From positions 62,001 to 126,000 of the forward strand of contig JAAOMT010000566.1 of assembly GCA_016748015.1 (NCBI GenBank): DNA of 64,000 nucleotides. The letters are read 5' to 3'. This document shows positions 1 through 32,955 of the stretch, one piece after another (within the stretch, counting starts at the first letter, position 1; every line of letters begins with the position of its first letter). The notes under the pieces are model-generated. The model had not been told where the DNA came from. It made no database searches and saw only the letters and a program-made list of their open reading frames with translations. The position numbers and the translations under genes were made by a program. This DNA comes from Geosiphon pyriformis uo1 (taxonomy: Eukaryota > Fungi > Glomeromycota).

Positions 1-531
1 TCTGGGACAATTAATGGAGGTTTCAACAATAAGAGATCCATTGGTAACCAGCAAAATGGTCAGTTTTCGTCTGGTACAATTAATGGAGGTTTCAACGATA
101 AGAGATCCATTGGTAACCAGCAAAATGGTCAGTTTTCGTCTGGTACAATTAATGGAGGTTTCAATGATAAAAGATCCATCGGTAATCAACAAAACGGTCA
201 GTTTTCGTCTGGGACAATTAATGGAGGTTTCAATGATAAAAGATCCATCGGTAATCAACAAAATGGTCAGTTTTCGTCTGGGACAATTAATGGAGGTTTC
301 AACACTAAGAGATCTATTGGTAACCAGCAAAATGGTCACTTTTCCTCTGGTACAATTAACGGAGGTTTCAATGATAAAAGATCCATCGGTAATCAACAAA
401 ACGGTCAGTTTTCGTCTGGTACTATTAATGGAGGTTTCAACACTAAGAGATCCATCGGTAACCAGCAAAATGGTGATTTTTCGTCTGGTACTATTAACGG
501 AGGCTTTAACGATAATAGTAATCTCTATTAG
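1..531 (+). CDS. Kex2-processed repeat protein (KEP) paralogue 1, 3' part only (5' end outside window)
   Basis: Manual frame +1 translation (not in ORF track, no start codon): SGTINGGFNNKR, six full 23-aa units SIGNQQNG[Q/H]FSSGTINGGFN[D/T]KR, then SIGNQQNGDFSSGTINGGFNDNSNLY and TAG at 529-531. Same unit and C-terminus as 14960-15712. Confidence 0.93.
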   Translation, partial: SGTINGGFNNKRSIGNQQNGQFSSGTINGGFNDKRSIGNQQNGQFSSGTINGGFNDKRSIGNQQNGQFSSGTINGGFNDKRSIGNQQNGQFSSGTINGGFNTKRSIGNQQNGHFSSGTINGGFNDKRSIGNQQNGQFSSGTINGGFNTKRSIGNQQNGDFSSGTINGGFNDNSNLY

Positions 532-1135
532 GTATTATTGCGATGCATTCTATCTGATTAGTTTTTAAATAAAATATAGTTAATATAAGTTATGAAAATA
601 TCGAAATTAAATCTCAAATAGATAAAAAATGCCTTTTATAAATAGTTTTGCTTTCAATTCTGATAATAGACTTCTATCATATTAGATTTTAAATTTTGTT
701 ATTTGAAACAAATGACGTTATTTTTTTGGGGTTTAAAAATTTTCAATCAGTTGCAAATCAAGATAAATAGTTTTTATTCTTAATAAAAATGCAATTTTAA
801 TGAAATTGTAACAGTTGTAATATCATTCTTAAATAAAAAATATAACTGATTTCTTATTTTTAATGGATTATTCTTAAGATTGTTTTCATTTAACTATATC
901 TTATTCCATTCTTTTTTTCTCATCATCTCTCACCTGTAACAATATCATTACTGGAATTATAAAAATAAAACTTGGTCAATCAATATAATTTAGTTCAAAA
1001 AGTTTGAATTAACTTCTTATATAATAAAAAAACAACTCAATTTAAAACTTAAGAAATTCTAAAATAGTTGCTTTTCTCGGGAATTGGATATAATACCAGA
1101 ATAATAACCATATCTAATTTTCTTATTTAGTATTG
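532..1135 (+). repeat. 3' flank duplicated with 15713-~16300 (KEP gene duplication)
   Basis: Near-identical by eye for about 300 bp after the stop codon (gtattattgcgatgcattc...), then progressively diverging with indels to about 1135/16300. Confidence 0.85.
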
Positions 1136-2187: not shown

Positions 2188-3731
2188 TCATTGAACCGGA
2201 TAGAAATTTCTACAATCACCAAAAGTTGTGTCAAACCATGGACCAAAATTTGCACTGTCACTTGCACCATTTCTTCCTACATTGCATTCCTGAAAATAAT
2301 AAATACTTTTCAAATTAATGTTTTAAAATTTAATAATTTGAAAAATCATAATAAAACTTCAAACATTAACCGGATTTTCCCCGTATTGTTGACGACTAGG
2401 ATAATATCCAGGACACTTATAAACCGTATATAATCTATTTTCTCCAATTTCTGATTGCAAAGTTGGACATTCACAGTTGTCTCTGGGAATCCAATATTCA
2501 GTTTCGGTATGCCAATAATGTTCCCCGACAGCATCTTTTTTCGGGTATTGTGAAACAAAATCATTAGAATGTGTCACTCGAAAAATATGCAAATCGTTTT
2601 TATAGCGATAAAATAGTTGGGCAAATTTATTATTGCCAAATCGTGGTTGTCCAAAAGTTACAACTTTGCCAAAGATTCGTCGACCATTAGTTTCCTTTAG
2701 AGTAGCTCCATTTATCTGGGATGCTAGTATATATCCCATGAGATTTAATGCATATACTGTATTTAAGTTGAAAAAAAAGCGGTATGAGAATTTCAAAGTT
2801 ATTCCTCAAAAACCTTTAATAATTTTATAAAAGCCTACCTCCTCCAATTCCATGACCAGTAAAAATAACTTGAATTTTATTGCCACTGATTTTTTTGGTT
2901 AGATTTAATACAAAATTTAAGATCGAAATATGTGTAGTTTCACCACATTGTTTGGTGAAACTCTTATCTATCAAGATTTTTGTGCCCTTTTGAGGAAGGA
3001 AAAGGTGATTTTTACGAGTAACCCATTGTGTTCTTTTCAATTCCGGCCCTGGTAATTTTTGTTAAAAAAATGATTTTGTAAAATAAACGAATGAAAATAA
3101 AATTTCAGTTAATAATTGTGTCAAACTTTCAAATAAAAATATACCTCGAAAATAGCCAATTATATTTTCTTGATCGTCTAAAAATATGTCTACTACATAA
3201 TAATAATAATAATAATAATAAAAATAAAAATAAAAATAAAAATAATAAAATAATAATAATAATAATAATTATTAGAATAAGAATAAAAATAAGAATATTT
3301 ATTTTTACTATTTTTCAAAGAAAAGTCAAAATTCAGACTTGAAAAGAAGTTTTTCAATTCCTCAATAAAAGTGTTTTACCCAACATATTTTGTCTCGGAT
3401 AATTAAAAGGGGCTTTAACTTCCTTACAATACGGGATATTGGCAATTCTTGCCATTTTCTGAAGAAAATTTATTAAATTTTCATCAGTTACTAGCTCTTT
3501 TGGTGGTGATGAATTTCGAGGCTTGCCAAATCCTCCTGTACGTTTTGAGAGGTTGGATTGAAACTTTGTAAAGTTTGAAAATATATTTTCCGGAGAATAA
3601 ATTTTCGAGTGAGAAAAAGAATTGGAAATATTAGCTGAAGAAGAACTTGAATTATGAAGATAATAGTATGAAAATTTTAGCATAATGATAGATTGTAGTG
3701 AAAAATAAAAAAAAAGTTTCCAGCCTTCCAT
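2188..3731 (-). CDS. Class-3 lipase-like protein, probably secreted or membrane-anchored and catalytically dead; 5 exons, about 365 aa
   Basis: Exons 3731-3380, 3192-3145, 3048-2839, 2756-2371, 2289-2188 join in frame with GT-AG introns. Lipase_3 motifs: MARIANIPYC, GYFRG, IFTGHGIGG (GHSLGG elbow), VTFGQPRFGN, RVTHSNDFV, YWHTETEYWI, ECN...ANFGPWF. Hydrophobic N-terminus. Confidence 0.88.
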
Positions 3732-13944: not shown

Positions 13945-14286
13945 ATTTTATAAAAAACTTGAATCAATAGCACTTTGCTACAGTATAACTAAATGAGTAT
14001 ATTTTTAAATTGGAGAGATACTTAATTATATGCGTATTTTGCGTTTTACCAGGATCTATCGAGCACCAACCTATTCTTTCTCATCATGAAAATTTCAAAA
14101 AAAGGCTAGTGCTTGGTCATTCTTGCGGCCTAAATGAAACCTTTTCGATAAAGGTACAAGCCATCTTTTTCAAGGTTGATTTCAATGGTAACCGCATGCT
14201 TAGCGAAAACTTTGTTACCATAGGAGACCTAAATGAAATACCGAGAAGATAAACAGTCATATTTAAATTGAATTTGTTTCAAAATT
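13945..14286 (+). repeat. Diverged duplicate of the KEP paralogue-2 upstream region (matches about 14510-14817)
   Basis: Shared text such as aatcaatagcactttgcta...gtgcttggtcattcttgcggcctaaatgaaaccttttcga...ttgaatttgtttcaaaatt; weaker match from about 13795/14396. Confidence 0.9.
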
Positions 14287-14306
14287 NNNNNNNNNNNNNN
14301 NNNNNN
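14287..14306. other. Assembly gap (20 N)
   Basis: Directly visible. Confidence 1.
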
Positions 14307-14844
14307 ACTTGTTTAGCCAAGCATCAGGTAGTAACCGTTTATAGTAATACGAAAGTTTTCTAATATTAGGGTAATCATATCTATTTTTGATGCTCCCAAT
14401 AAACCGTTCGTTCCGTTTCCTATTATAGTAATCAACTGAGCGCATAACTTTATGGACTTTCAAATGCTTTTATCAAATGAAGTTTTGATTAATCAAACCA
14501 ATATAATCTATTTATAAAAAACTTTAAATCAATAGCACTTTGCTATAGTATAACTAAATGAGTATATTTTTAAAATTGCGGAGAATATATAATTATGCAT
14601 TTTACCATCTATCATCATGAAAATTTAAAAAAAAAGGTTAGTGCTTGGTCATTCTTGCGGCCTAAATGAAACCTTTTCGACAAAGGTAAAGCCATCTTTT
14701 TCAAGGTTGATTTCAATGGTAACCGCAGGCTTAGCGAAAATTTTGTTACCATAGGATACCTAAATGAAATACCGAGAAGAAAAACAGTCATGTTTAAATT
14801 GAATTTGTTTCAAAATTAAACCGATCATGAGAATGGGAAAATGG

Positions 14845-14851
14845 TATAAAA
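14845..14851 (+). promoter_or_regulatory. TATA box of KEP paralogue 2
   Basis: TATAAAA about 110 bp upstream of ATG 14960, followed by a pyrimidine-rich initiator-like tract. Confidence 0.65.
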
Positions 14852-14959
14852 GAAGAGGTTCGCCTGCTCAATATCTCTTCATTCACACTCTAAAACATCT
14901 AAAAGAAATCTTTCTAATACATTTTTTTAAAAGCCTTAAAAACACTAAGATTGATTAAA

Positions 14960-15712
14960 ATGACTGGTAAAATTTTTATTACACAAATTTGCACAGCTAT
15001 TTTTCTCTTGTCTACATTTTCAACGTCTAGTGCAGCTGCATTAAATGCAAAGAGGGGTATCGGTAATCAGAACAACGGCCAGTTTTCCCATGGTACTATT
15101 AACGGAGGCTTCAACCATAATGGTGATAGATTAGGATATAATTCCAATGCAATTAGTAACCAGCAAAATGGTGATTTTTCGTCTGGGACAATTAATGGAG
15201 GTTTCAACGATAAGAGATCCATAGGTAACCAACAAAATGGTGACTTTTCGTCTGGGACAATTAATGGAGGTTTCAACAATAAGAGATCCATTGGTAACCA
15301 GCAAAATGGTCAGTTTTCGTCTGGTACAATTAATGGAGGTTTCAACGATAAGAGATCCATAGGTAACCAACAAAATGGTGACTTTTCGTCTGGGACAATT
15401 AATGGAGGTTTCAACAATAAGAGATCCATTGGTAACCAGCAAAATGGTCAGTTTTCGTCTGGTACTATTAACGGAGGTTTCAACAATAAGAGATCCATTG
15501 GTAACCAGCAAAATGGTCAGTTTTCGTCTGGTACAATTAACGGAGGTTTCAATGATAAAAGATCCATCGGTAATCAACAAAATGGTCAGTTTTCGTCTGG
15601 TACTATTAATGGAGGTTTCAACACTAAGAGATCCATCGGTAACCAGCAAAATGGTCACTTTTCCTCTGGTACTATTAACGGAGGCTTTAACGATAATAGT
15701 AATCTCTATTAG
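14960..15712 (+). CDS. Secreted Kex2-processed repeat protein (KEP) paralogue 2, 250 aa, intronless
   Basis: ATG at 14960 (the track's TTG start is 3 codons earlier). Signal-peptide-like MTGKIFITQICTAIFLLSTFSTSSA, then LNAKR; 8 KR sites; 9 repeat-like units (2 divergent, 6 exact KR-flanked 21-mers, 1 terminal). Confidence 0.95.
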   Translation: MTGKIFITQICTAIFLLSTFSTSSAAALNAKRGIGNQNNGQFSHGTINGGFNHNGDRLGYNSNAISNQQNGDFSSGTINGGFNDKRSIGNQQNGDFSSGTINGGFNNKRSIGNQQNGQFSSGTINGGFNDKRSIGNQQNGDFSSGTINGGFNNKRSIGNQQNGQFSSGTINGGFNNKRSIGNQQNGQFSSGTINGGFNDKRSIGNQQNGQFSSGTINGGFNTKRSIGNQQNGHFSSGTINGGFNDNSNLY

Positions 15713-17699: not shown

Positions 17700-18060
17700 A
17701 TAGGCGATAGGCTCGGGCATAGGAAAACAAAGCGGACCTGATATGGAGAAAATGAATATGACATTGGCAAAGGGTTTTGTATACAAAGAATGGCATATAG
17801 AGATTCGGGGACACCAAGGTGGCTGATACGAAAATCGTCGAGCTGGTAAGAAATTTCGTGCGCATGCATCGTGAGGAAATTTGGCTACCAACCGCCAAAA
17901 CAAGAGCCGATAAGGAAAACAACCGGAGAATGATGTGGAGGAAATAAGATTCAAAGGGCCACACTTAGGAAATGTGGTATGTGGCTGGGACATTTATGTG
18001 CCATGGGCGTGCGCAAACCGTTCCAAATGGTGACTAATATTAGTGCCGATTTCCGCGAAA
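17700..18060 (+). mobile_element. 3'-terminal fragment of a LINE ORF2 (different family from 49-55.8 kb)
   Basis: Translates (one frameshift) to LAKGFVYKEW / KIVELVRNFVRMHREEIWLPTAKTRA, aligning with LCKGFVFDE* / RIVSFVRGFCLAFRDNVWLVRARHRA of the large LINE. Confidence 0.7.
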
Positions 18061-18061
18061 A

Positions 18062-21000
18062 ATTAGTTATAAGAAACAAAAATGTTATTTGTTATAACCA
18101 AAACAATTAGAACAAATAAATTTAGAAAATTTAGATCTATTCCAACAGATATAAATTAAATTGTTGTTTAACAATTTTGCAAATATTTTTGCAAGTAAGA
18201 ATAAATTTGAGAGAATTGATATTATTTAATATTAAATAAAAACCAAAGATACTATATTAATTAAATAAAAAACATACAAAGTTTTAATTATTAGCTATAA
18301 AATTATTTGCCAAGAAATCAATTAAATGTTAAGCAATAGATTAATTTAATTATTTATAAGTCTATAGTTATTATTAATATTACTTGTTAAGAAAAAAAAA
18401 TAGAAAAATCTGTTTTTGTATAGACTATAGAAAGCTTAACAGTATTATTTGTAATAACAGTTATTTAATTTCACATATTCAGAAATTGTTTAATGCTTTC
18501 AAAAAAAATGGTTTTTAATATTGAATTTAGATAGTAGTTATTAGTATGTAGTCATAAATTCAAATAACAAGAAAAAAATGACATTTATCACAAAAGAAAA
18601 AAATTTTGAATTTAATATTATGTCTTTTAACTTAATCAATACACCAATCATATTCTAATAACTAATGAAAACTATTTATACAAAAATATTGTAGAAATTA
18701 ATAGTTGTATATTTAAATAACACAAATATATTTTTTAAAACATTTGATAATTATTTTTATTATCTTTAATAAGTATTTAAAAAGTTGAAAAGAGTCAAAT
18801 TAAAATTAAATATTATCAAGTGCTTCTTTAAAAAAACAGAGCTTAAGTTTTTGAAACATATTATTAGTAAAAACAATATCAAAACAGATTCAGACAAAAT
18901 TAAGAAAGTTAAAGATTTTTCAGTACCAATAAATTTTACAGAACTAAAAACATTCTGGAATTTGCTAAATATTACTGCCATTTTATTCACTATTTCTTTA
19001 AATTGACTTAACTATTGCACTAGCTTTAAGCAAAAACACAAAATATAAATGAACTGAACAATAACAAGTAGTTTTTAATACACTAAGAAAAAAGCTTGTT
19101 CAAGCTTTAATATTAATTTATCCAGATTATAGTAAATTATTTATAATTACAATAAATATATTAAACCAAATATTAAAAACAGTTTTATCTCAATAAAAAT
19201 TCAATAAATAAGAATATTTAGTGATATATGTTAGCTAAAACTTGAGTTTAATATTACTACAAATTTTTTTACTCTTTTTTTAATATTGTTAATACTATTA
19301 TGCTATTAATTTTGTTGTTAATAGAAGTTAGTAAATTTTTAATAAGCTAATTTTTTTTAAAATATTTTTTTATATTTTAAACTATATATGTTGTTGAATT
19401 TATAATAAAAAAGTCAATTCTGTACTAATTATATGTATATTTATTTTGTAGTAAAAATTGACTCTTTTACAGAAAAATTTTATCTGTAAGCTTTTTAAAA
19501 TATGTGTAATTACTTTGCTATAAAAGTTAATTTTTTTACAGAAAATCTTAATTGTAAATAACTTAATAATATAAAAAAAAATAAAAAAAAAATAAAAAAA
19601 TAAAAAAATATGTTAAGAAAGTTATTAACAGTAATTAAAATTAATAGCTAATCAATTTCAAATTTTTAGTATAAAATAAGTTTTATTAAAATTGATTTAT
19701 AAAAAAAATATTTTTTTGAAAAAAAAGCTCTTTTTTTATACACTTTATTGTAATATTTTTCTAATATTTTGGTAAATTAAAAATATTTTTTGTCAAATTA
19801 CAAGTTATTTTTACAAACTATAAATTATTTTGATAATCTGTTAAATATTTTGTCAAATTATTAAATATTTTAGCAAATTTTAAATGTTATATAGTTTAGC
19901 ATATTATATAATCTGATTATTGCAATTTGATTATATTTGTGTTTTATACAAATTGAGTTATTAATTAAATAATAATTTGGATAATTTGATAAGATAATAA
20001 GTAATAAATTAAAATAATAATATATATTAATTAATAATAAAAGTTATAAAGATAATTTTTTTTTAAATAATATCTCAAATTTCGACTAATAATATAACTT
20101 TTTCTCAAAACTAAGCTCTGTTAAAGTCCAAATACTGTCTGTAATTTCCAAATAGTAGTTCAAAATTATTGAGAAATTTGGTCTAAAAATTGTTAAAATT
20201 TCAGTTCTATAAACTTTTTAATATATTAAATCTTTAAAAGTTATAAAATTGGGTTTTATAAAATGTTTTTACAAGTATAAAATAGATTATAGAGTCTAAA
20301 AGCTGTTTTAAGTTTGTAATAAATATTTGTTGATTTGACTGTTGTTTTAAATAACTTCAGTAGTAAAATTTACTGTTTTAAGCCCTAGTTTTTTTTCATA
20401 AAGTGTTTTTTAAATATAAAAATATTTATAAATTAAAGAATATTTGTTGTTTTGTTTATTAAAACACTATTAAAGTTTTTGTTGAATTGTGGCATTTAGC
20501 ATAATATCAATAAGTATAAACATTAAATTTTCTCTTAAAACTTGCTTTAAAAGTTTTGATAAGTAAATTTCAAAATAACTTTTTGTGTTTCTTCTATAAA
20601 AGTAGTAATTTTGTAAATTTGTGGTTAAAGATATAATTAATTCTGTTTAAGTGTAATTAATATATTTTTTGTAATTATTATAGATAATTTAAGTAGTATT
20701 TTTAAGACTAATATTAATTTTGGAATAATTGTTGAATGTTTTAAAGAATAATCATAATTACTAATAAAATTATTAATAAATAAACTATTTTTGTTATGTA
20801 AGATTTTTATGTTATTTTTGTTTTGTTTTTTGTGCAGTTTTTGTGCAGTTTTTGTAAAATTGTTTCTAAAATATAAAAAAATAACTATAAAAAAAATTTA
20901 AATTTAAATATTTAGGTTTAGAAGTTGTTCAATAATAATTATTAATTTTAAGTTTTAAGAAATATCTTTAGAAATAACCAAAAAAAATTGTGTATCAATT

Positions 21001-24000
21001 TGTGAAATAAGAGATTCAAAATTAATTCTAAAATAATAGTATTTTAGTTTATTATCATATACAACTTTTTTTAAAATCTTATTATCAAGTTTTAACTTGT
21101 ATAATCTATTTTTTAAAATTTTGTATATATAAAATAGTTTATTCTATTTATGATTAAATTTTTTATTTTATTGTTTTTTAATCTTAATTTTATGTAAGAA
21201 ATTTTTATTTTTAACTTTAAATTTATTAATAATTATTAACAATTTATTGTTATGTTATTTTTTTTGTTGAATTTAAAAGTGTTTTATATAAGTGGTTGTA
21301 ATTTGTTATTTTGCTTCTATATATTAAGAAATGAATAAGCTTTTTTTTATAGTGTTTTTTAAAAGTTGTTTTTAATAATTTGTTGAATTAAATAAAATTT
21401 TACTGTAAAATTAATTAGTAATATTGCTGTTTTTTTATAAATTAAATTAAATAACATGTGTTTTATTGTATTTTGTTTTAATATTTTATATATTAATAAT
21501 ACTAATAGAATAAAAAGATTTTATTTTTGCTTAAAATTTGTTAAAACTTTGGCTAATAATTTACAAAGTATTTTATTAAAATATTTTACAAGCTTACAAA
21601 TAATGTTTTTATAAATAAAATTTGCAACTAATTTTGTATTTACTTATTGAATTATTCTTATTTTAAATCATTTAGTAAAATAATTTACTGCAATTGCAAT
21701 ATATTGGTTTTTATAAGTTGTAATAAATAGTGGTCCAATTAAATTGATATTAACTTAATTGAAGGATTATCTAACTTTAATTAGATTTAAAAATTTTATA
21801 GAACATATTTCTTTTTTTTTAATATTTATCACAAAATTTAACATATTTATAAATATTTTTTTTTATTTAGGACCAAAAATAGTGTTTTAATATTTTTTGG
21901 ATTGTACTATCTCTTTTAAAATATGCTAATAAAGGATTTGAAAACATATTATATAGAATTATTTTTTTTTATGTTTTTAAATTATTCTAAGTAAATTGTT
22001 TAGATTTTTATAATTTCAATAATAAATAATATTATTGTATATAAAATATTATTTTATTTAATATTATAGTCAATATGTTTTATTTAAAGACTAATTTTCT
22101 GGTATTATAAGTGTTTTCAAGTATTATTTAAGATTGTTATAGTTTTTAAGATCTATTTTTTGTTGTTTATTGCTGTTAATTAGATTTAAAATACAGATTA
22201 AAATGATAAAAAACCCAAATTACTGTTGTTGTTTCTAGTTTAATAGCAAAATAATTTTTTCTGCTAATTTTAGTGTTCTACTAATATAAGTATTTACTTG
22301 TTTATTGCTATTATTATTTAATTAAAATCAGAATAACACCAAAAATAATATATAAAAGCATTTATAATTAATTAAAATCTTTTGCTAAAGTCTAAATAGA
22401 TAAAAATTAGGACTGTTGTAAGCTTTTTCTTAAGAATTTTAAAAGTTTTTTGTTATTTTTTGTTTATTTGTATTCAATATTTTTGTTGGTTGGATAATTA
22501 AATAATTTTGTAATTTTTGATAATAAAATACTAATTCAGTAAATTTTTTAGTTTTATGGTATTTTATAAGACTTTGAAGTTTTTAACAATACTAATTTTT
22601 TTTGAATCAAGTTTAGCTCTTTTTTTACTAATAATATGATTTAGGAAAACCAAGCTGGTCTTTTTAAAATGACATTTTTTAATGTTTAATTTAAATTTTG
22701 CTTTTTGTAATTATTAAAAAACTTTTTGTAAATAAACCAAGTAAGTTTTAAATAATAATAAATAAATATTAATATTATTTAGATAAACAACTATTAACTT
22801 TTAAAAAATTTCAACATAAACAATATCCATAAGTTTTTAGAATGTTGTTAATATATTACATAATTCAAATAGCATTATAATAAACTTATTATTTTTTTTT
22901 AAGTGGTAAAAGCTGTTTTAAAGTAATCTTTAAGGTCTATAACAATTTGTTAATATTTATTTTCTAAATTTAATATTGAAAAGTATTTAATATGTTGTCA
23001 ATTTAGAATAAAAAATAAACATTTTTAATTATAATATTATTTAGTTAGTAATAGTCAACACAAAAGCAGATTTTTCTGTTTTTTTGATAAAAACTACTGG
23101 TAAAACTTAAAGACTTATTAATAATTAAATAAGTTTATTGTTAAATATACATTAAATTTTTTCGTAAATAAATAAATAAATATCTTTCAATAAAACTTGA
23201 TAGACTTGTTGCTATTTGGTTTTGTATCTTTTATATAAATTTGATGTTAAATTAGATTAGTTTTTTCCAAATTATTGTTGTTTTTAATAAATATATTTAC
23301 ATGTTTTATAATTAATTTTTTAAGTTGCTTTTATTGTTGTGACTCTAATTGTTTTATATTATTTCAAAATAATTTCTTAATTACAACATAATAGTTTTTA
23401 ATAATAAAGTTTGAATTAAATATTAAGAAAGAATATCTAATTATTTTTGTAAAATTTAAAACTATTTGTGACAGTTCTTGTTAAAAATTATTACTATAAA
23501 TAATTCCAATTTTTAAATAATTATCTAATATAATAGAGTAATTATTAAGATTGTAAAAAATAATATTGAATTTTTTATTCAACTTAAACATTTGTTAAAT
23601 AATATTAAGTATTAAGTAAATATATGCTTTACAAACTTTTTTAAAAAATAAAATAATAATAGTTTTTGGTAATTTGAAAATCTGATAAGATTGATTTTAT
23701 ACATAGAAAACTATATTTACTAAAATAATAAATTGTTTAATTGATCTAAAATCTTGAGTTTTTTTTTTACTTTTGCCAAGTTTTTTTTAATTTATAACTA
23801 ATTGCAAATCCAAAATGTTGATTAAAAGTAAATAGATAGCTTAAGCATTTTTTTTAGCATGTTTAATTATAAAAATGTTTTTAGTGTATTCTGTATTAAT
23901 AATTTCTTTTTTAATATTAATTTTTTTCTTGTTAATATAATTAAAAAGCAATTTGTATAATTGCTTTTGGGAGAATTTCGAAAACAATTTTAAGATTGAT

Positions 24001-27000
24001 TTTTGTGAGTGATTTTGGTTTTAGATAAGAATATTTTTATTTAAATATCAAAAATCATATTTTGCATCAATTTTATGAGCTTTTTTTGGTTTGATTCCTT
24101 GTTTATTGTTGTCAAAGTATTTAAATAATAGAGCAGATTGGTTTTTGGTAAGATAAATTAGAGTTGTTAAAACTTTTTCTTCAATTTCTCCAAATTCGAT
24201 TTCTTTTTGATCATTTTTAATGAATAATAATATATTAAAAACATAGCATTTAAGACATTATATATTATTACAAAGCATAATATATACTTTTTAAAGTTAA
24301 ATATTTATGTATTTTAATCATTATATTTAAGTTTTTTTGGAGAGATATGTATGATTAAAGGTCAGATAGTAAAGTTTTACTTTGTTTTCATAGTTAAATC
24401 TGGCTAATTCTATAGTGTATTTAATATATTCTACTTCTTTTATTTGATAAATGTTTTTTTGAGATCTTTTATTAATTATAATTATTGCAAATTTATAAAT
24501 TATTTCAATATTATGTAAATAATAATACAATTTGTTAAGAATATTATTGTATACTGCAGTAAAATATGTTCCATGTTTTATTTTTTTGAAAATAAAAAAA
24601 CATATTGATAAGTTTGATTGCAGACTTTTTTTCTTATTACAACATCAATTTAATTGTATTTTTAAACAATAATTCTTTATATATAAGAAAGAGTATATTG
24701 TTTTATTTTTTACTTTATTTTAGGTTGTCAAATTATTTTCTGTGGCAAACTTTATAATAATAATATGTTCATGTTTTATATTTTTTTAGGTAATATATAA
24801 ACTCTTATAAATAAAAGCTTTTTATTACAATTTTTATATTTAAATAGAATATAAGCCAATTGTTTTTTTGGTTTTAATTTTAAGTATAAAATCTACTAAA
24901 TATTAATTTATTTATTTGTTAATGTTAATATAGCTTATTAACTAAATTTTTTAGACTATAATAATATTAATTGTGGTTTTAAAGTTCGGAAAAATTGTTT
25001 TGTTTTTTTAGCTCAATTAGACCAAAAGTTAAGTACTATATAGATTTTAGTTATTAATTTTTTTTTCTTTGAATTTAAAAACTAGTGTTTTTTTTAATTG
25101 TTTGTTAAAAATATTACAAGTAGCAAATATTTAAATATATTGTCTTTGATAAAAAAAATTTAGCTTTTGGGTTTTTTAATTTAAATTGATATTAGTTTTA
25201 AAAGACCAATTATTTTTGACAAAAACTTAGTATTAGAATACATTTATAAAAAACTTTAATTAAAATAGTAATTTTATTAATAATGAAAAAAAAGTTGTCA
25301 ATTTTTTTTATGTATGTCTTTTTTATATTATTAACAGTTATAATAATTATTTGAACAAATCTGTTAATATTTTGCTTAAGTTGTTATATTAACTGATAAA
25401 TAATAATACTTTTAATAGATTTATTATTTAAAATTAATTGAATAGATTTTTCTTTAACTTTAGTCTTAGTATATATTATTATAATTGCTTTTTGTTCAAA
25501 AATTGATGTATTGTTAAATAAAAAAGATGATTTATTTGTTTTAAATTTAAATAAAAATATGTTTAAAATATTGGTGTTTTTAGCAATTTTTACTAATAAA
25601 ATTGTAGTATTGTTATAAAAAAATTTTGCTATTGTATTATAATTCTATCTTTTAAAAGTATAATATAGTAAAAATTTGCTATTGTAAAATAACTAAGTTG
25701 TATGTAAAAATATCTGAGTGGTTGTTAATTATTATTGTAAAGTTCTAATTAATTATTAAAACCAAATTTGTTATTGGTTAATTAAAAACAGTTTTGTAAT
25801 ATAAATTGGTTAGGTAAACCAATTTTTTTGTTGATAATTAATAACTTTAAACTAAAAGTAGTTAATAGTATTATTATAATTGTTGTAAAACAAACTGATA
25901 ATAAATAGATTAAAATTTTAATAAATAGTAAATAGATGATTATAGATTGTAAAATTGTTTTTTTTAATCTTTTTGTATTTTTCTGCAATTGTGTTTTCAA
26001 TGTTCAAAAATTCTATAATAATAATAATTTAATAATTGTGTTTGGTTGTTATTAGATAATAATAAAATTTTTTGGTTTTTTTTTGATGGTAGTTAATATT
26101 TTTGTTGTTAATTGGCAAAGTATGTTTTAACTTTCTTAATAAGTTAATTGATTTTTTTTTTGCTGCTAAACTGGTTTTTTTAATCGCAAAGTTGACAAGT
26201 TTGGTGTAATTTGCTTTTTTTATAGCCATTTTATAGTACTTAACATGTTAAATAACAGTAATTAAATTTGTTAAAGCATATAAGTAAACTTTTTTGATTA
26301 ATTTATTTTTTAGATTAGTAATCTTTTAATCCAAAATTTGAGTATTATAATAATAAGCATTTGTTTTTAATTGATAAATTTTTTGAAAAAATTTGTTGAA
26401 CTTTTTAATATAAGTTATAATAGATTCAAATAGTTTTTATTTAATATTTTAAAAGCAGTTTTGAAATGTAATTGAAGTATTGTTATTTGTAAACTATTTG
26501 TAAAAAGCATTTTTAAAAACTAATTAATTTGCAAAAAAAGTGGCCAAATTTTCGAATTATTTACCTACAGTTTTTATAAGAAAATAAGAAATTGTTCTTA
26601 AAATTCTTATTGTATTTTATCTATTTACATTTTCTGCTTTAGTAACTTAATCAAATCACTTTTGGAGACTGGTTTCAGTGTTTTTTTCAGAAAAATCAGA
26701 TATTTTTACAATATAAGTAATCATTTTTTTGTTTTTTTTGTTTTTTTTAATTGATTTAAAAACGTTTTTTTTATGAGCTAATGTTTTTAAATATTTATTT
26801 TGGTTTTTGGCTAAATAATTAAGAAAATTAATACTAGTATAAATTAATTTTAGCTGTTAAATAAGACTTTTGGTAATGTTTTTAAGTCTTAAAAATTGAT
26901 TAAGTGGTGAATTTAGTCTTTGTACTTGAGCAAGTAAAGCTAAAAAAAATGTAATTAAAAGTGGTAATTTAGTATTGGTTCCTTGTTTAGGTGTTTACAA

Positions 27001-30000
27001 ATGTTAAAAATTTGTTTTTGGTATATTGGGTGTTATATAAACTGGGTAGGTGTTTTTTTTTGCTTTGCTGCTTGTTTTTGGTTCTAATTCAAGTTTAAGA
27101 ACAAATTGTGAGTTAGCAGAATATTTTTTTCACAAAACTTAATAATATTGTATTCAAGTTTTTCGAAATAAATAGTATAAGTATTAGCATTAATATTTTT
27201 TAAATTTTTGTTCGAATAGTAAATTAAGTTTTTAAAAAAGTTTTACTTGACTTCTATAATATTGTAATTTCCAAAAAAATAATTGTTGATTCGATTTTCA
27301 ATGTATTAAAAAAGTGTTTTCTTAAAAACTGTAATTTTGTCTCAGATTTCAAATTGTTGTTTGTAATAGTTACCACTTTGATTTAATTGTTGCTATGTTA
27401 TTTCTAAAAAGCATCAAATATTACTTGAGGTTTTTTTACACTTTTTTTTATATTGTTAATACTGTTATGTTGTTAATTTTGTTGTCAATAAAAGTTAATA
27501 AACTTTTGATAAGTTAATTCTTCTTCTAAAGTATTTTTTATACTTTGAACTATGTATGCTGTTGGGTTTATAATGAAATAGCCAATTTTATGCCAATTAC
27601 TTATATAGTTACTTTGCAGTAAAAGTTAATTTTTTTATAGGAAAATCTTATCTGTAAGTTTTTTAAAAATATGTGTAATTATTTTGCTATAAAAGTTAAT
27701 TCTTCTACAAAAAATTTCGACTATAGACGACTTAATAATATAAAAAAAAAGAAAAAAAGAAAAGAATTTAAACTAAAAATTAAAAATTAAAAAATGTGTT
27801 AAGGAAGTCATTTCGAATTCAGGCCTAGAAGTTACTAATAATTACTAAAATTGATAGCTAATCAATTTTGAACAGAAATAATTAAGAATTTTTGTTCTTT
27901 AAAGTGAGTTTTATTGGAATTGATTTGTAAGAAAGATATTTAATAAAAAATTAATTCTGATTAAGATATATTTTTTTAAAGAAAAAAGCTCTTTTTTTAT
28001 ATAATTTATTATAGTACTATTTTATAATCTAACACTTTTTTCTTTTTTTAATATTTTGGTAAACTAAAGATATATTTTATCAAGCTACAAATTATTTCTG
28101 CAAACTATAAATTATTTTGGTAAACTGTTAAATATTTCATCGAATTATTAAATATTTCAGCAAATTTTGAATGTTATATAGTTTAGCATATTACATAATC
28201 TGATTATTACAATTTTATTACATTTGTGTTTTATACAAATTGAATTATTAATTAAATAATAATTTGAATAATTTAATAAGATAATAAATAATAAATTAAA
28301 ATAATAATAGATGCTAATTAATAATAAAAGTTATAAAGATAATTTTTGCTAAATAATATTTTAAATTTCGGCTGGTAATACCAGCCAAAAAAAATTATAG
28401 CACTTTAAAACTAAAATATTTAGTTATTTATTGGACTGTAATAAAATAAAAAAAATACTTAAGTCAAAAATTTGACATATATATAGACTACAAAAAATTA
28501 ATATTGATTCAAAAGCAAAAATTTGAAGATAATTGTCATATAAAATAGAAAATAGATTATTATTATTTAATTATACAGTATATTATAAAAAATGAAAAAA
28601 AATGAAAATACTAATGATTTATTCAAAATAAAATAAATCTAAGAACATTTTAATACTAAAAATAAGTCAAATTATAAATATATCAATATATCAATAACTT
28701 TAATATTATATTAATACTCAATAGTTTCAAAAAAATTATTTTAAAATAAACAAAACAATATAAAACAACAATCAAAATATTTTATTATTTATCAAAATAT
28801 ACTATATTAAAAAATAAAAAAAAGCCAAATCAATTACTTAAAGTAGTTATAGAACCAAAAAAAAACAATATTATATAATATGCATTCAGAACCAACAGCA
28901 GAATATTTTCATAAAGAAACTACAATTGAAAAAACCAGAAAATAACATTACTATTCATTAATATATTTAGACATTATTTAATATATTTAAAATTATAATG
29001 CTTGTTAAAAAAAAGAAAAACAAGACCCAATAAATTATTAAGACCAATAAAAGTAAGATAACTATTTAATTAGATTATAATTAACTTGGTAGAATTACTA
29101 ATAATTATTAATAAAGACAATAGATATATAGTAGTAATAATAAATTATTTTACTAAATAGCCAGAAGCTAAAACTATCCAAAAAGCCAATACAAAAACAA
29201 TAACAAAATTTGTGTACTAAAAACTAATTTTTTATTATAAATGTCCAAAAAAATTATTATTAAATTAAAAAACTTATTTTGTAAACAAAACATTAACAAA
29301 ATTAAGTCAAAAATTTGAAATAAAAAGATTATTATTATTACTGTATTATCTATAAAAAAAAATTGAATTAAAAAGTTCAATAGAATATTGTATAAAATAA
29401 TTGTTAAAATTAGCCAAAAAAATTAAAAAAAATAAGACTTGTTTATATTATTAATATTATTTGTTTATTAAACAACAAAACAAAATATAATTTAAACAAT
29501 ATTATTTAAATTGGTTTATAGTAAAATAATAATACTATTAATTAAGATAGATATTTAAATATATCTAATTAAACCAATAGCAAAAGCTATTTTTTAAGCA
29601 ATATTATTACAAAAAATATATAATTTAATAAAAACACTAGAAAATAAATAAAGAAAAGCAGCTAATAATATTTAAAAGTTACAAAAAAAACAAAAAAACA
29701 ATATAACAACTAGCTATTAAATAAACCAATTGAATTTAAAATTGGAAACAAAGTGTTTTTATATTATATTAAGACAAAAAAACAATAGAATAGAAAATTT
29801 AATCTCAAATAAGATAGTCTATTTTACATTAAAAAAATTTTAGGAAATAATATCTATAAATTAAAATAGAACAATAAAATTTTAGCCAAAACAACATATA
29901 ATAATTAACTTAAACCATATTATAATAGAATATTATTAGTTATTAATAACATTCTACAATTGGAAGTATAAAAAATATTAATTAAACCAGATAAAATTTC

Positions 30001-31600
30001 ACAAAATTTAAAACTAATAATAATTATTAAAGCAAATACATAAATCAAATTAGCCAAAAATATAAAAACCCAATATATATGACAAAAAAAAAGCAAAAAA
30101 ATAGAAATTATTAATAATATTTATTTTATTATTTAACAATTATTTTAACTTATAAAATATTAAGAATTAAACATAAAAATTATAATTAATAAACAAACTA
30201 TTTAATATAAAAACACAAAAAAGAAACAAGAGCTCTAAAATAATTAAAAATACCAAGTATATTTATTATTTAAAAATATAATAGATAAAATAATAATAAA
30301 AGTAAAAACAGTATTAAAAAATTCAATTAAGATTACAGTATATTAAAAGATAATCAAAAAAAATTGAAATTAATAAGTACAATAATTTTCCAAAAACTTT
30401 TGCTATTATTACTTAGAAAAACACATATTTAGAACTTGTATATAAATAAAACTAAGCAAATATTCAATTCAATTATATTATAACAAATAGAACAATTTAT
30501 GAAAAAAGACAGCTTAATTATATATACAAAAGCAATTTATTAATTACAAACAGGATTTCAAGATTGTTTAAAAATATTGTTATATTCAATAATAGATACA
30601 ATAACAATTAATTAATAAAAAAAATTATTAATGCTTAGTTCAAAGAATTACAGATTAAAATTAACAATGTAATTTTAGAAAAAGAAGTAATAAAGTTAAT
30701 TTAAAAAAAAATTGGAAAATTTTAATAAAGCTTAATATTAAAAAAAAGATAATATTACTTATATAATAATAGAACCAATAAGATAAATAAATAGCCAATT
30801 AAAAATAAACATAATAAAAACAAATTTTGAATTCTTTTTAATTAAATCTTAAGATTTTAGAATTCTAATAATACTTTTAATAGAAATTGCAGAATTTCAA
30901 AAATATTTATAGAAAAAATTCAAAAATTTCAAAAAATTTTATATAATAAAGATTATGTATATATAACAGTAAAAATAAAAATAAAAAAGACAAACCAGAA
31001 TTTAAAACAAAAATTCAAGAATTAGTTTTCTTTTTTTCTCTTTTACTTTTAAAATTAGTTTGCTATTACTTAAAATAAAATTATTTATTTATTAATAAAA
31101 TTATTAATTACTATTCAATTTATATTGTTATTATTATTTAATTAAATTATTTACTTTTTTAACCACATTAATAATTCATGTTAATAATAACTAATATTTA
31201 ACTATATTAAAACAATAGTTTTTAATTATAACTATTAACAAGATATTAATTTCTTAATTTTTTTATTCTTTTTATTCATTTTTTTTATTTGTGTATTTAA
31301 TAATTGATTAAGAAAAAGCATTAAAATTACAATATTAAAAATTATTTAATAAAAAATACCAAGATAAAATATAAATTAAATAATAAAAATTACTTACTAA
31401 AAAAATATGTTCACCAAATTAAATTAGTTATTATGTTAAAGAGTTAGATATTAAGTATTGTCAATTATTTGTTATTAAATCTTTCTTCCTAAAAAGTATT
31501 GTTAACTTATAATATTAAAACTTAAAAACAAAATTCATAAGCTTTAACCAATTCAAAGATATACTTTTAAAGTATTTTAGTAATTTAAACACTATAATTT
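18062..31600 (+). mobile_element. Gypsy A: 5'-truncated, heavily decayed Ty3/Gypsy (RT-RNase H 18062-19251, interrupted; RNase H-integrase from 28381; probable 3' LTR about 30753-31600)
   Basis: Collinear by eye with Gypsy B pol (18085 vs 38588; 28381 vs about 39758). 30850-31450 resembles 32960-33570. Ends approximate. Confidence 0.75.
19252..28380 (-). mobile_element. Gypsy D: full-length decayed Ty3/Gypsy nested in the RNase H of Gypsy A; LTRs 19252-20094 and 27419-28380
   Basis: Two direct repeats with TATTAC...(G/A)TAATA ends (decayed TGTTAC...GTAACA). PBS-like relic next to 27419. Gag relic MAIKKANYTKLVNFAI matches Gypsy C MTMEEANRTKLVNLAI. The host reading frame resumes at 28381. Confidence 0.8.
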
Positions 31601-31870
31601 AATTGTAAAATAAATTTTTTTATATTATTAAGCAAAGTATAAATAAAATTATTATTCAATATTTTGCTTAATTTAATTAAATTTACTGTTAGATTAAAGT
31701 AATTAAACAAGAATATTATATTAATTTTCATATTTTAAATCAATTTATTAGAGATTAAAAAGCAATATTTTAGAAAAAATATATTTTGCTGTTACTTAAA
31801 TAAAAAAAACCAATTCAAAACAATTAAAAAAAATGTAATTAATATATAATAACATAAAAAAGTGTGATAA

Positions 31871-31950
31871 TACAAAATAATACAGAATAATATGTAATAA
31901 TTCAAAATAATATAAGATAATACACAATAATATAAAATAGTACAAAATAA
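31871..31950. repeat. Degenerate 10-bp tandem repeat (TACAAAATAA-like, 8 units)
   Basis: Directly visible. Confidence 0.7.
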
Positions 31951-32955
31951 CTAATTATAACATAAATAATTTATTATAGCATAAAAGATCAAAACAATAA
32001 CAGAAATAATAAGTAATAACTAGTAATAACTAGTAATAACAAATAATAAAAAGCAATTTTGTAAAATTAGAAAATATATATAAAAATAAACAGTTTTAAC
32101 AAATAAAAAAAAACAAATAAAAAACAAGAACTTATTCTCTTAAAATTACATCTTATTTCTAACTTAATAAAATCTTTTATTTTAATTCTTTAATATTTTA
32201 TACTTATTATTAAATAAAATATTATTTAATTTACTTTTACATAATTTCAGAATTTGTATTATTAAAATTAAATTAATTATGTTTCTTATTCTTGTTTTAG
32301 ATCAGATATTTTTAGCATAAACAGCTTCAGAATTTTAATAATATAGGCTAATTACTTTTGATTATAGCTATTGACAATATTAATTTCTCTTTTTTTTTTT
32401 CTTATTTTTATTTTTTTTGAATTTTTTATTTTTTTCTGGTAAAGTAATAATGTTAAGAAAATTAATTGTTTGAGAATAAACTTTGTAATAGCTTGGTAAA
32501 AAAAAAGCTTTTCTTAGGTTTAAATATTAATTTTATCTTGTTAACTTATCAAAAAAACAAAAAAAACAATATTAAACTTTAGTAATTGTGTTCAATTAAT
32601 TTTAAAAAAATAGCTTATATATATGTAATTGCAAACAGTTAAACCATATTTCTGTGCTTTATAACTAAAAAACATTACAAATAAATTCATATATATTAAA
32701 AATCTTTAAAGACTAATCATATCAATCTGCTATTTATAGCAAACAAAAAAAATTCTCAAGCTTTCTTATTTAAATATAGAGCACTAAATATTATTATTAT
32801 ATCTTATTAAGTTTATTTGTAATACTGCCTACTTTAATTTTTTATTAGAAGTTATTACACTTAAAGCTCTTAAATTAATTAAAAAAAAGCTAATTATTGT
32901 TATTTATAGAATATAGAAAGTATATTAGCATATAAATTAGCCAACCAGAAGTAAC

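What the first reader, a model, noticed from the sequence alone, without database searches (positions are those of the whole stretch)
15218..15709. The peptide core looks like an amyloid/beta-arch former rather than a cyclised RiPP or pheromone
Seen: the 21-mer is an internal pseudo-dimer, SIGNQQ-NG-Q-F / SSGTI-NG-G-F-N. It is nearly uncharged, has no Pro, Cys, Tyr or Trp, no X-A/X-P Ste13 spacer, and no N-x-S/T sequon despite many Asn. No DUF3328/UstYa, tyrosinase or other tailoring gene is visible in this window. Established: N/Q/G ladders with spaced hydrophobic residues typify HET-s 21-aa repeats, RHIM/PP motifs and curli repeats, and Ustilago Rep1 peptides are Kex2-released wall amyloids. 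Inference: proteolysis-triggered functional amyloid, with KR linkers keeping the precursor soluble.
Basis: inference. Interest (0 to 1): 0.8.

Follow-up and report, generated by a model that had tools for sequence, protein, structure and literature searches.

The report
Geosiphon secreted repeat-peptide precursor; amyloid untested
This is a real, unannotated gene of the fungus Geosiphon pyriformis for a secreted protein that is probably cut at Lys-Arg sites into many copies of one Asn/Gln/Gly-rich 21-residue peptide; the idea that these peptides stack into an amyloid stays plausible but could not be shown or refuted by computation.

Summary
**The gene.** The array at 15218-15709 is the repeat part of a 250-aa ORF (14960-15712, +). 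It has a signal peptide, a Lys-Arg pro-site, one 54-aa two-module unit, six 23-aa units ending in Lys-Arg, and a terminal module.

**What held up**
- The composition claims hold: no Pro, Cys, Tyr or Trp, no sequon, no Ste13 spacer.
- No UstYa or tyrosinase match was found in the window, in 20 kb to its left, or in the genome.

**What did not hold up**
- The "pseudo-dimer" and the missing sequon are no more than chance gives.
- AlphaFold2 gives a weak solenoid-like model (pLDDT 59.8). The meaningless antisense reading of the same array folds far more confidently (89.5), so the model is no evidence.
- No amyloid family, solved structure or outside relative matches.

**New here**
- The 20-aa module is the true unit.
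- It also occurs as two-module peptides, and uncut in two annotated Geosiphon secreted proteins.
- Five of its positions never change, and variable and fixed positions alternate as in a beta-strand.
- Purifying selection is strong.

**Verdict.** It is a lineage-specific Kex2-processed repeat protein. Self-association of the peptides is my leading reading (about 0.35), and true amyloid is untested. The scan noted this cluster before on neighbouring DNA. Schultz et al. 2022 already raised amyloid for Gly/Asn-rich Geosiphon proteins.

The parts
14827..14959 (+). Conserved promoter-proximal region and 5' leader, with a TATA-like box about 105 bp upstream of the ATG
   Evidence: the alignment of upstream DNA from four paralogues, including the two divergent ones, is nearly invariant here, although coding dS between them is 0.56-1.0.
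14960..15712 (+). Complete intron-less ORF of 250 aa plus stop: the repeat-peptide precursor
   Evidence: It is not present in the public protein collections searched.
14960..15040 (+). Signal peptide (about residues 1-27), read by inspection
   Evidence: a short basic N-terminus, a hydrophobic core of about 14 residues, then small residues. No signal-peptide predictor was available. The same leader is conserved in paralogues.
15041..15055 (+). Short pro-segment ending in the first Lys-Arg site
   Evidence: A dibasic site (Lys-Arg, or Arg-Arg in L010) is kept at this place in all four aligned paralogues.
15056..15217 (+). 54-aa two-module unit: module, 11-residue linker, module, then Lys-Arg. 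No internal dibasic site
   Evidence: The same format is the only unit in L006, L009 and L010.
15218..15631 (+). Six 23-aa units, each a 20-aa module plus one variable residue plus Lys-Arg
   Evidence: Within this gene only positions 9 and 21 of the unit vary.
15632..15709 (+). Terminal module with a 5-residue tail and no Lys-Arg
14..568 (+). 3' part of a neighbouring paralogue of the same subfamily; its 5' part is lost in an assembly gap
   Evidence: L002 ORF 2389-3093.

Best explanation
The locus encodes a Geosiphon-specific secreted Kex2-processed repeat protein.

**Shown**
- An intact ORF with a signal-peptide-like leader.
- Eight regularly spaced Lys-Arg sites.
- A kexin-type convertase gene elsewhere in the genome.
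- A conserved promoter region.
- Strong purifying selection on the peptide.

**Inferred**
- Kexin cuts after each Lys-Arg in the late secretory pathway, and a Kex1-type carboxypeptidase trims the two basic residues.
- This would give about seven neutral or weakly acidic 21- to 26-residue peptides and one 52-residue two-module peptide.

**Most likely mode of action (inference, about 0.35)**
- The 20-residue module is a beta-rich structural repeat. It stacks on like modules when they are joined in one chain, as in the two uncut paralogues.
- After cleavage the one- and two-module peptades act by associating with each other, or with module-bearing paralogues, at the hyphal or bladder surface. The product would be a self-assembling extracellular material.
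- It could also be a nicked stack that never falls apart.
- Whether the assembly is a true cross-beta amyloid is untested.
For: **Gene and processing**
- ORF, leader and Lys-Arg spacing.
- Kexin gene: Peptidase_S8 exons at C608:605309-606087 and a P domain at C608:604583-604753.
- Promoter and 5' leader conserved across paralogues.

**Selection**
- dS is 0.56-1.0 against dN 0.13-0.21 between subfamilies.
- 14 of 20 module positions are invariant over 31 modules, and most of them show synonymous codon variation.

**Module as a structural unit**
- It occurs singly (23-aa units).
- It occurs as pairs with an 11-residue linker: the first unit of every family member, all units of L006 and L009, and the sole unit of L010.
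- It occurs three times, uncut and without Lys-Arg, in the annotated hypothetical proteins G9A89_004911 and G9A89_004885. BLASTP to the window protein gives E = 2e-11.
- Across all of these, N4, S11, I15, G17 and N20 never change. Positions 10, 12 and 14 vary freely and accept charged residues, while 11, 13 and 15 are fixed. That is the alternation expected of a beta-strand with one constrained face.

**Composition**
- 38% Asn+Gln, 24% Gly, no Pro, net charge 0 after Lys-Arg removal.
- A prion-propensity score is 0.11-0.19 for cores against 0.03-0.09 with Lys-Arg attached (scale from memory).

**Precedent**
- Ustilago Rep1 peptides are Kex2-released wall amyloids (PMC3133707).
Against: - There is no direct evidence of cleavage, expression or assembly. 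No RNA run was listed.
- The AlphaFold2 model is weak (pLDDT 59.8, pTM 0.62). The antisense control scores 89.5 and 0.82. AF2 is known to invent solenoids for repeats (PMC11795689).
- Foldseek finds only weak beta-helix hits, all with E above 0.4.
- Pfam listed no amyloid family at E up to 10, and no PDB chain matched.
- There is no hydrophobic aggregation hot spot, and GRAVY is -0.88. The product would not be an amphipathic, repellent-type coat.
- About half of the copies carry Asp at position 9 or 21. In-register stacking of identical copies would pile up like charges.
- Near-identity of the copies is equally typical of ligand precursors.
Confidence: 0.35

Rival explanations
1. Soluble extracellular signal or effector peptide. 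The precursor is an amplification device, as for alpha-factor, that delivers many copies of one sequence-specific ligand. The ligand would be sensed by the fungus itself or by its cyanobacterial partner.
For: - The architecture matches catalogued Kex2-processed repeat proteins, which are frequent in Glomeromycotina (PMC6339444).
- The copies are nearly identical and under strong purifying selection.
- The core is hydrophilic and has no aggregation hot spot.
- No tailoring enzymes were found, so the product would be a linear peptide.
Against: - There is no Ste13 signature. According to PMC6339444, most Rhizophagus precursors have one.
- The same module is released singly in one subfamily and as a 52-aa pair in another, and it stays uncut in two paralogues. 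Such changes of format are unusual for a receptor ligand.
- The residues conserved across the whole superfamily are Asn, Gly, Ser and Ile. These are typical of turns and ladders rather than of a binding epitope.
Confidence: 0.3
2. Non-amyloid hydrophilic matrix material. The released peptides or the precursor stay disordered and act in bulk, for example in water retention, adhesion or as a gel. This is what has been proposed for Gly/Asn-rich disordered secreted proteins of early-diverging Glomeromycotina.
For: - Schultz et al. 2022 (PMC8786786) describe Gly/Asn-rich secreted disordered proteins in Paraglomus, Ambispora and Geosiphon (GpRIC1-3, with Lys-Arg sites).
- This protein has a low-complexity, hydrophilic composition.
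- Its AF2 confidence is low.
Against: - Disordered bulk material rarely keeps 14 of 20 positions invariant at dS 0.56-1.0.
- The alternating pattern of conservation points to a defined strand.
- No relation to the GpRIC proteins was detected.
Confidence: 0.2
3. Intact beta-solenoid-type secreted protein that is not cleaved. The Lys-Arg pairs would be surface residues of a folded repeat protein such as an adhesin or an ice- or surface-binding protein.
For: - AF2 gives periodic short strands, three per unit.
- The weak Foldseek neighbours are all beta-helices, including antifreeze and ice-binding proteins.
- Uncut paralogues exist.
Against: - Lys-Arg is kept after every unit in a secreted protein of an organism that has a kexin gene.
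- The uncut paralogues lack Lys-Arg exactly at these places.
- AF2 evidence is void for repeats (PMC11795689).
Confidence: 0.1
4. Precursor of a cyclised or otherwise modified RiPP.
For: The general architecture of the precursor is shared with ustiloxin-type precursors (PMC7329392).
Against: - The core has no Tyr.
- No UstYa/DUF3328 and no tyrosinase were found in the genome, and none in the scanned flanks.
- According to PMC7329392, DUF3328 genes lie on average about 3 genes from the precursors they serve.
- A 21-aa core is far longer than the known 4-residue cores.
Confidence: 0.03

Closest known systems
Kex2-processed repeat proteins (KEPs) of fungi, as catalogued by Le Marquer et al. 2019 (PMC6339444) and Umemura 2020 (PMC7329392)
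   Same: A signal peptide, tandem near-identical units each ending in Lys-Arg, and a small intron-less gene in a paralogue cluster. Such proteins are frequent in Glomeromycotina.
   Different: The core peptide has no detectable relative outside Geosiphon. It has no Ste13 spacer and no DUF3328 neighbour. The gene is absent from the public annotation.
Ustilago maydis Rep1 repellents
   Same: The precursor is cut at Kex2 sites into many peptides that stay in the wall and form amyloid fibrils (PMC3133707).
   Different: There is no sequence similarity. Rep1 peptides are 34-53 aa and form amphipathic films that make hyphae hydrophobic. This core is 21 aa, strongly hydrophilic and Asn/Gln/Gly-rich. 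Assembly is untested here.
GpRIC1-3 and other Gly/Asn-rich secreted proteins of Archaeosporales and Paraglomerales (Schultz et al. 2022, PMC8786786; Hoffrichter 2018 thesis, cited there)
   Same: Geosiphon secreted proteins that are Gly/Asn-rich and carry Lys-Arg motifs. That paper already discusses amyloid-type properties on the grounds of composition.
   Different: GpRIC2 and GpRIC3 are 456 and 470 aa. Neither the word searches nor the profile search linked them to this module. I could not confirm that they are in the libraries searched.
HET-s prion-forming domain and related fungal amyloid signalling motifs
   Same: Resemblance only. The repeat length is about 21 residues, with conserved Asn and Gly and spaced hydrophobic residues. 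The 54-aa unit has two modules joined by a loop, like the two pseudo-repeats of HET-s (this comparison is from my own knowledge and was not tested).
   Different: Pfam listed no match. HET-s-type motifs are cytoplasmic and paired with NLR receptors, whereas this protein is secreted and has no such partner.
Sup35 Asn/Gln-rich steric-zipper segments
   Same: Module positions 3-8 form a Gly-Asn-Gln-Gln-Asn-Gly stretch that resembles the classic zipper heptapeptide of yeast Sup35 (from my own knowledge, not tested).
   Different: This is a short resemblance in composition. There is no homology and no evidence of zipper formation.

Membership tests
Kex2-processed repeat protein (KEP) | N-terminal signal peptide | tested here: met
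   By inspection only: a basic N-terminus, a hydrophobic core, then small residues. The leader is conserved in paralogues. No predictor was available.
Kex2-processed repeat protein (KEP) | Tandem near-identical units separated by dibasic Kex2 sites | tested here: met
   Eight Lys-Arg sites. Six 23-aa units, one 54-aa unit and a terminal unit.
Kex2-processed repeat protein (KEP) | A kexin-type convertase in the organism | tested here: met
   Peptidase_S8 exons lie next to a P_proprotein domain on C608.
Kex2-processed repeat protein (KEP) | Actual cleavage and secretion of the peptides | not testable with these tools
   No RNA or proteome data could be reached.
Ustiloxin-type RiPP (dikaritin) precursor | DUF3328/UstYa gene nearby, a tyrosinase, and a Tyr-containing core | tested here: not met
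   No UstYa or tyrosinase match in the genome (the controls were silent too) or in the flanks. The core has no Tyr.
Alpha-factor-like pheromone precursor | X-Ala or X-Pro Ste13 spacers after the Kex2 site | tested here: not met
   Each unit starts Ser-Ile, or Ala-Ile in subfamily B.
HET-s-type, sigma, PP or RHIM amyloid motifs | Match to the family profile | tested here: not met
   Pfam scans of the precursor, the paralogues and single units at E up to 10 list none of these families. HMMER's filters drop most matches above about 0.1.
HET-s-type, sigma, PP or RHIM amyloid motifs | Cytoplasmic motif paired with an NLR or effector partner | tested here: not met
   The protein carries a secretion leader. 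Genome-wide matches to the module are all small secreted ORFs.
Curli (CsgA) repeats | Match to the curlin repeat profile | tested here: not met
   Not listed in the Pfam scans.
Functional amyloid in general | Cross-beta fibrils (ThT or Congo red binding, 4.7 A reflection, detergent insolubility) | not testable with these tools
   Only proxies were run. The composition is favourable. The hydrophobic hot-spot scan is negative. AF2 is uninformative.
Rep1-type repellents | Sequence relation to Rep1 | tested here: not met
   No relatives at all were found outside Geosiphon.
GpRIC / Gly-Asn-rich secreted proteins of Glomeromycotina | Sequence relation to GpRIC1-3 | tested here: inconclusive
   No hit was found in searches whose length range includes 456-470 aa. 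The presence of GpRIC proteins in the libraries was not verified.

The most novel reading that the evidence does not exclude
A lineage-specific beta-solenoid-type repeat protein has been turned into a 'pre-cut' building kit. By placing Lys-Arg sites between rungs, Geosiphon would secrete single-rung and double-rung peptides. Once the basic residues are trimmed, these would re-stack without covalent links into an extracellular cross-beta material, possibly templated or capped by the uncut paralogues. This would be a second, independent and hydrophilic case of Kex2-released functional amyloid in fungi, and the first in an early-diverging, cyanobacterium-hosting lineage.
Probability: 0.2. Interest if true: 0.75.

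Novelty: new member of a known kind. Interest (0 to 1): 0.4.

Why it matters
Only one Kex2-released wall amyloid, Ustilago Rep1, is established. A hydrophilic Asn/Gln/Gly-rich example in Geosiphon would show that fungi use proteolysis more widely to switch on self-assembly outside the cell. It would also give a small, easily synthesised model peptide.

The family offers a natural series: an uncut three-module protein, a two-module peptide and a one-module peptide. That series makes the idea directly testable. Geosiphon is the only fungus that houses cyanobacteria inside its cells, so a lineage-specific, strongly selected secreted peptide family is also a candidate for surface or symbiosis biology.

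If the peptides turn out to be soluble, this is one more orphan repeat-peptide precursor missed by the public annotation.

Tried and rejected
1. **AF2 of the precursor as a stand-in for a stack of peptides.** It gives a solenoid-like but weak model. I rejected it as evidence after the antisense ORF of the same array, window:15131-15658:-, folded with pLDDT 89.5. This agrees with PMC11795689.
2. **Foldseek against the PDB.** No hit below E 0.4.
3. **Relatives.**
   - Word search with the window protein and with L006: none.
   - Profile of the two-module unit against 1.84 billion representatives: none.
   - Genome contigs and metagenome contigs: none.
   - PDB sequences: none.
   - ESM Atlas: no usable hit.
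4. **RNA evidence.** No run was listed.
5. **Pseudo-dimer and sequon arguments.** Shuffle tests put both at chance.
6. **Link to heterocyst-pattern peptides of Nostoc.** I considered this from memory for the linker. I dropped it because the motif is not conserved among the paralogues.
7. **RTX-like or antifreeze-like motifs.** Considered by eye and not matched.
8. **Not available.** AlphaFold-multimer stacks of the free 21-mer, ArchCandy, Waltz, TANGO and PLAAC.
10. I reran it by reference.

Full report
**What is there**

The window is very AT-rich, at 13-43% GC. It is part of contig C549, 451 kb, of a 128-Mb assembly. Two annotated proteins encoded on the same contig are named "hypothetical protein [Geosiphon pyriformis]".

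A 69-bp tandem array of 7.9 copies with 90% matches lies at 15152-15696. It sits inside one uninterrupted ORF, 14960-15712 on the + strand. The 250-aa product has these parts:

- a leader that looks like a signal peptide
- a short pro-segment ending in Lys-Arg
- one 54-aa unit made of two modules joined by an 11-residue linker
- six 23-aa units that each end in Lys-Arg
- a last module with a 5-residue tail

The finding's coordinates cover the six units and the last module.

**Check of the observation**

The compositional statements are correct for this gene:

- The mature part has no Pro, Cys, Trp, Met, Glu or Val.
- Tyr occurs only in the linker and the tail.
- There is no N-x-S/T sequon and no Ste13-type dipeptide after Lys-Arg.
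- The trimmed core is 38% Asn+Gln and 24% Gly, with net charge 0.

33% of shuffled cores also lack a sequon. The internal "pseudo-dimer" is matched or beaten by 62% of shuffles, and a repeated gapped tetrad occurs in 21% of them.

The absence of tailoring genes holds and extends further:

- ORFs of 100 aa or more in the first 34 kb of the window, plus three of the longer ORFs beyond that, give only a Lipase_3 fragment, a dUTPase and retroelement domains.
- ORFs of 90 aa or more in the 20 kb to its left give only Lipase_3 fragments.
- The whole genome gives no six-frame match to UstYa/DUF3328 or to tyrosinase. The caveats are that genes match exon by exon and that the prokaryotic control genomes were silent too.

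**Is the gene real, and can it be processed?**

The 130 bp upstream of the ATG, including a TATA-like box about 105 bp upstream, are nearly invariant among four paralogues. Their coding regions differ by dS 0.56-1.0.

A kexin-type convertase gene is present. Peptidase_S8 exons lie directly upstream of a P_proprotein domain on contig C608. I searched those exons separately and did not join them.

No RNA run could be listed, so expression and cleavage remain inferred. The gene and its close paralogues are absent from the public protein collections.

**The family**

The genome holds several copies.

- *Subfamily A:* the window gene; copies at C549:58-63 kb, of which one runs into the window start and one is frameshifted; and a C727 copy.
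- *Subfamily B:* C549:396 kb and 403 kb. These consist only of 54-aa two-module units.
- *C778 gene:* a single two-module unit.

Every member begins with a two-module unit. The 21-mer is therefore one format of a 20-residue module and not the basic entity.

Two annotated secreted proteins, G9A89_004911 and G9A89_004885 (P0001 and P0002), carry three degenerate modules. They have no Lys-Arg between the modules and a Cys-containing C-terminal part after them. BLASTP of the window protein against P0001 gives E = 2e-11.

**Selection and pattern**

Over 31 modules of the cleaved subfamilies, 14 of 20 positions are invariant, and most of them show synonymous codon variation. Between subfamilies dN is 0.13-0.21 and dS is 0.56-1.0.

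With the uncut paralogues included:

- N4, S11, I15, G17 and N20 never change.
- N7, G8, G13 and N16 almost never change.
- Positions 10, 12 and 14 vary widely and accept Asp, Lys and Glu, while 11, 13 and 15 stay fixed.

This alternation, with conserved Asn-Gly pairs at regular spacing, is what a beta-strand and arc repeat with one constrained face would show. It is suggestive and is not a formal test. The pattern used to collect the modules fixes some positions in advance.

**Tests of the amyloid reading**

- *Family membership.* Pfam lists no HET-s, sigma, RHIM, curlin or other amyloid family for the precursor, its paralogues or single units at E up to 10. No PDB chain matches the module profile.
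- *Hydrophobic aggregation scan.* There is no hot spot of five residues, and GRAVY is -0.88 (scale from memory).
- *Prion-type composition score.* Cores score 0.11-0.19, units with Lys-Arg 0.03-0.09, and the whole mature precursor 0.05 (scale from memory, calibrated for much longer windows).
- *Structure prediction.* AlphaFold2 on the precursor, a natural covalent stack of the peptides, gives three short strands per unit. Mean pLDDT is 59.8 and pTM 0.62. Foldseek finds only weak beta-helix neighbours, all with E above 0.4.
- *Control.* I folded the antisense ORF of the same array, which has no biological meaning. It gave an all-beta repeat with pLDDT 89.5 and pTM 0.82. Pratt et al. 2025 report confident solenoids for 41% of random perfect repeats (PMC11795689). 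The model therefore says nothing.

**Literature**

- Rep1 of Ustilago is cut at Kex2 sites into peptides that form wall amyloid (PMC3133707).
- Kex2-processed repeat proteins are numerous in Rhizophagus, mostly with Ste13 signatures (PMC6339444).
- DUF3328 genes accompany 22% of such precursors at a mean distance of about 3 genes, and cyclisation uses Tyr (PMC7329392).
- Schultz et al. 2022 (PMC8786786) describe Gly/Asn-rich secreted proteins of Geosiphon, GpRIC1-3, known from cDNA clones and carrying Lys-Arg motifs. They note that such compositions go with amyloid properties.

The general idea is thus already in print, although not for this gene. My searches did not link this module to the GpRIC proteins. 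Another note of this scan describes a different Asn/Gly Kex2 precursor elsewhere in the genome.

**Reading**

That this is a secreted Lys-Arg-processed repeat precursor is well supported, at about 0.85.

How the peptides act is open. I put self-association of modules first, at about 0.35, for three reasons. The same module, with the same fixed residues, exists in covalent tandem, as pairs and as singles. A single 20-residue rung cannot keep a fold alone. The composition is also favourable.

| Reading | Confidence |
|---|---|
| Self-association of modules | about 0.35 |
| Soluble sequence-specific ligand | about 0.3 |
| Disordered hydrophilic matrix | about 0.2 |
| Uncut solenoid protein | about 0.1 |
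| Modified RiPP | about 0.03 |

**Verdict**

The exclusion of RiPP and pheromone types holds, and the amyloid claim is untested.

This is a new, unannotated, lineage-specific member of a known kind of gene. Interest is moderate. The family's natural series of uncut, two-module and one-module forms makes the hypothesis easy to test at the bench.

Noticed in passing
L012:1117-1743 (+) = C549:424.6 kb; L013:1234-1773 (-) = C549:275.8 kb; a further fragment at C549:283.7-284.0 kb: Annotated hypothetical proteins G9A89_004911 and G9A89_004885 have the same leader and three degenerate copies of the module without Lys-Arg. The modules carry N-G-S sequons, and a conserved Cys-containing C-terminal part follows. 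They have no relatives outside Geosiphon.
   Followed up: partly
L006 (C549:403.3-404.3 kb) and L009 (C549:396.2-397.0 kb, beside a long N gap): A second subfamily is built only of 54-aa two-module units, with Trp or Asn at module position 10. The L009 copy is interrupted by an assembly gap and changes frame.
   Followed up: partly
L004/L005 = C549:58754-59847 (-): A subfamily-A copy whose N-terminal half and repeat half lie in different frames. It is either a frameshifted pseudogene or an assembly error inside the repeats.
   Followed up: no
window 14010-14260 and the N run near 14263-14463: A second copy of the promoter-proximal segment abuts an assembly gap. The antisense ORFs at 14117-14260 and 14615-14791 are near-identical. 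This fits another note of the scan that a further gene copy is hidden in the gap.
   Followed up: no
window 2359-2796 (-); L020:879-1295 (-); L018:5845-6228 (-): Lipase_3 (class 3 lipase) fragments are interleaved with the peptide-precursor genes over at least 25 kb. Another note of the scan calls them pseudo-lipases.
   Followed up: no
L015:1217-1465 (+) = C357:377.7 kb; L014:1484-1750 (+) = C354:105 kb: Other small ORFs share the same signal peptide and Lys-Arg pro-site, but are followed by unrelated sequence. One is Cys-containing and one looks degenerate. The leader seems to be reused by several secreted-protein genes.
   Followed up: no
window 18001-32000: A 14-kb stretch has extremely low GC (13-20%) and strong, sign-switching GC and AT skew. 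No ORF of 100 aa or more lies in it.
   Followed up: no
window 37796-38659, 44286-45212, 49851-51896: These ORFs carry dUTPase, retroviral-type aspartyl protease, and reverse transcriptase plus RNase H domains. They are retroelement remains in the GC-richer right half of the window.
   Followed up: no
L003 = C727:169198-169923 (-): This copy scores exactly like the C549:60936-61661 gene, with a further fragment at C727:172 kb next to a gap. It may be a duplicated or allelic contig.
   Followed up: no
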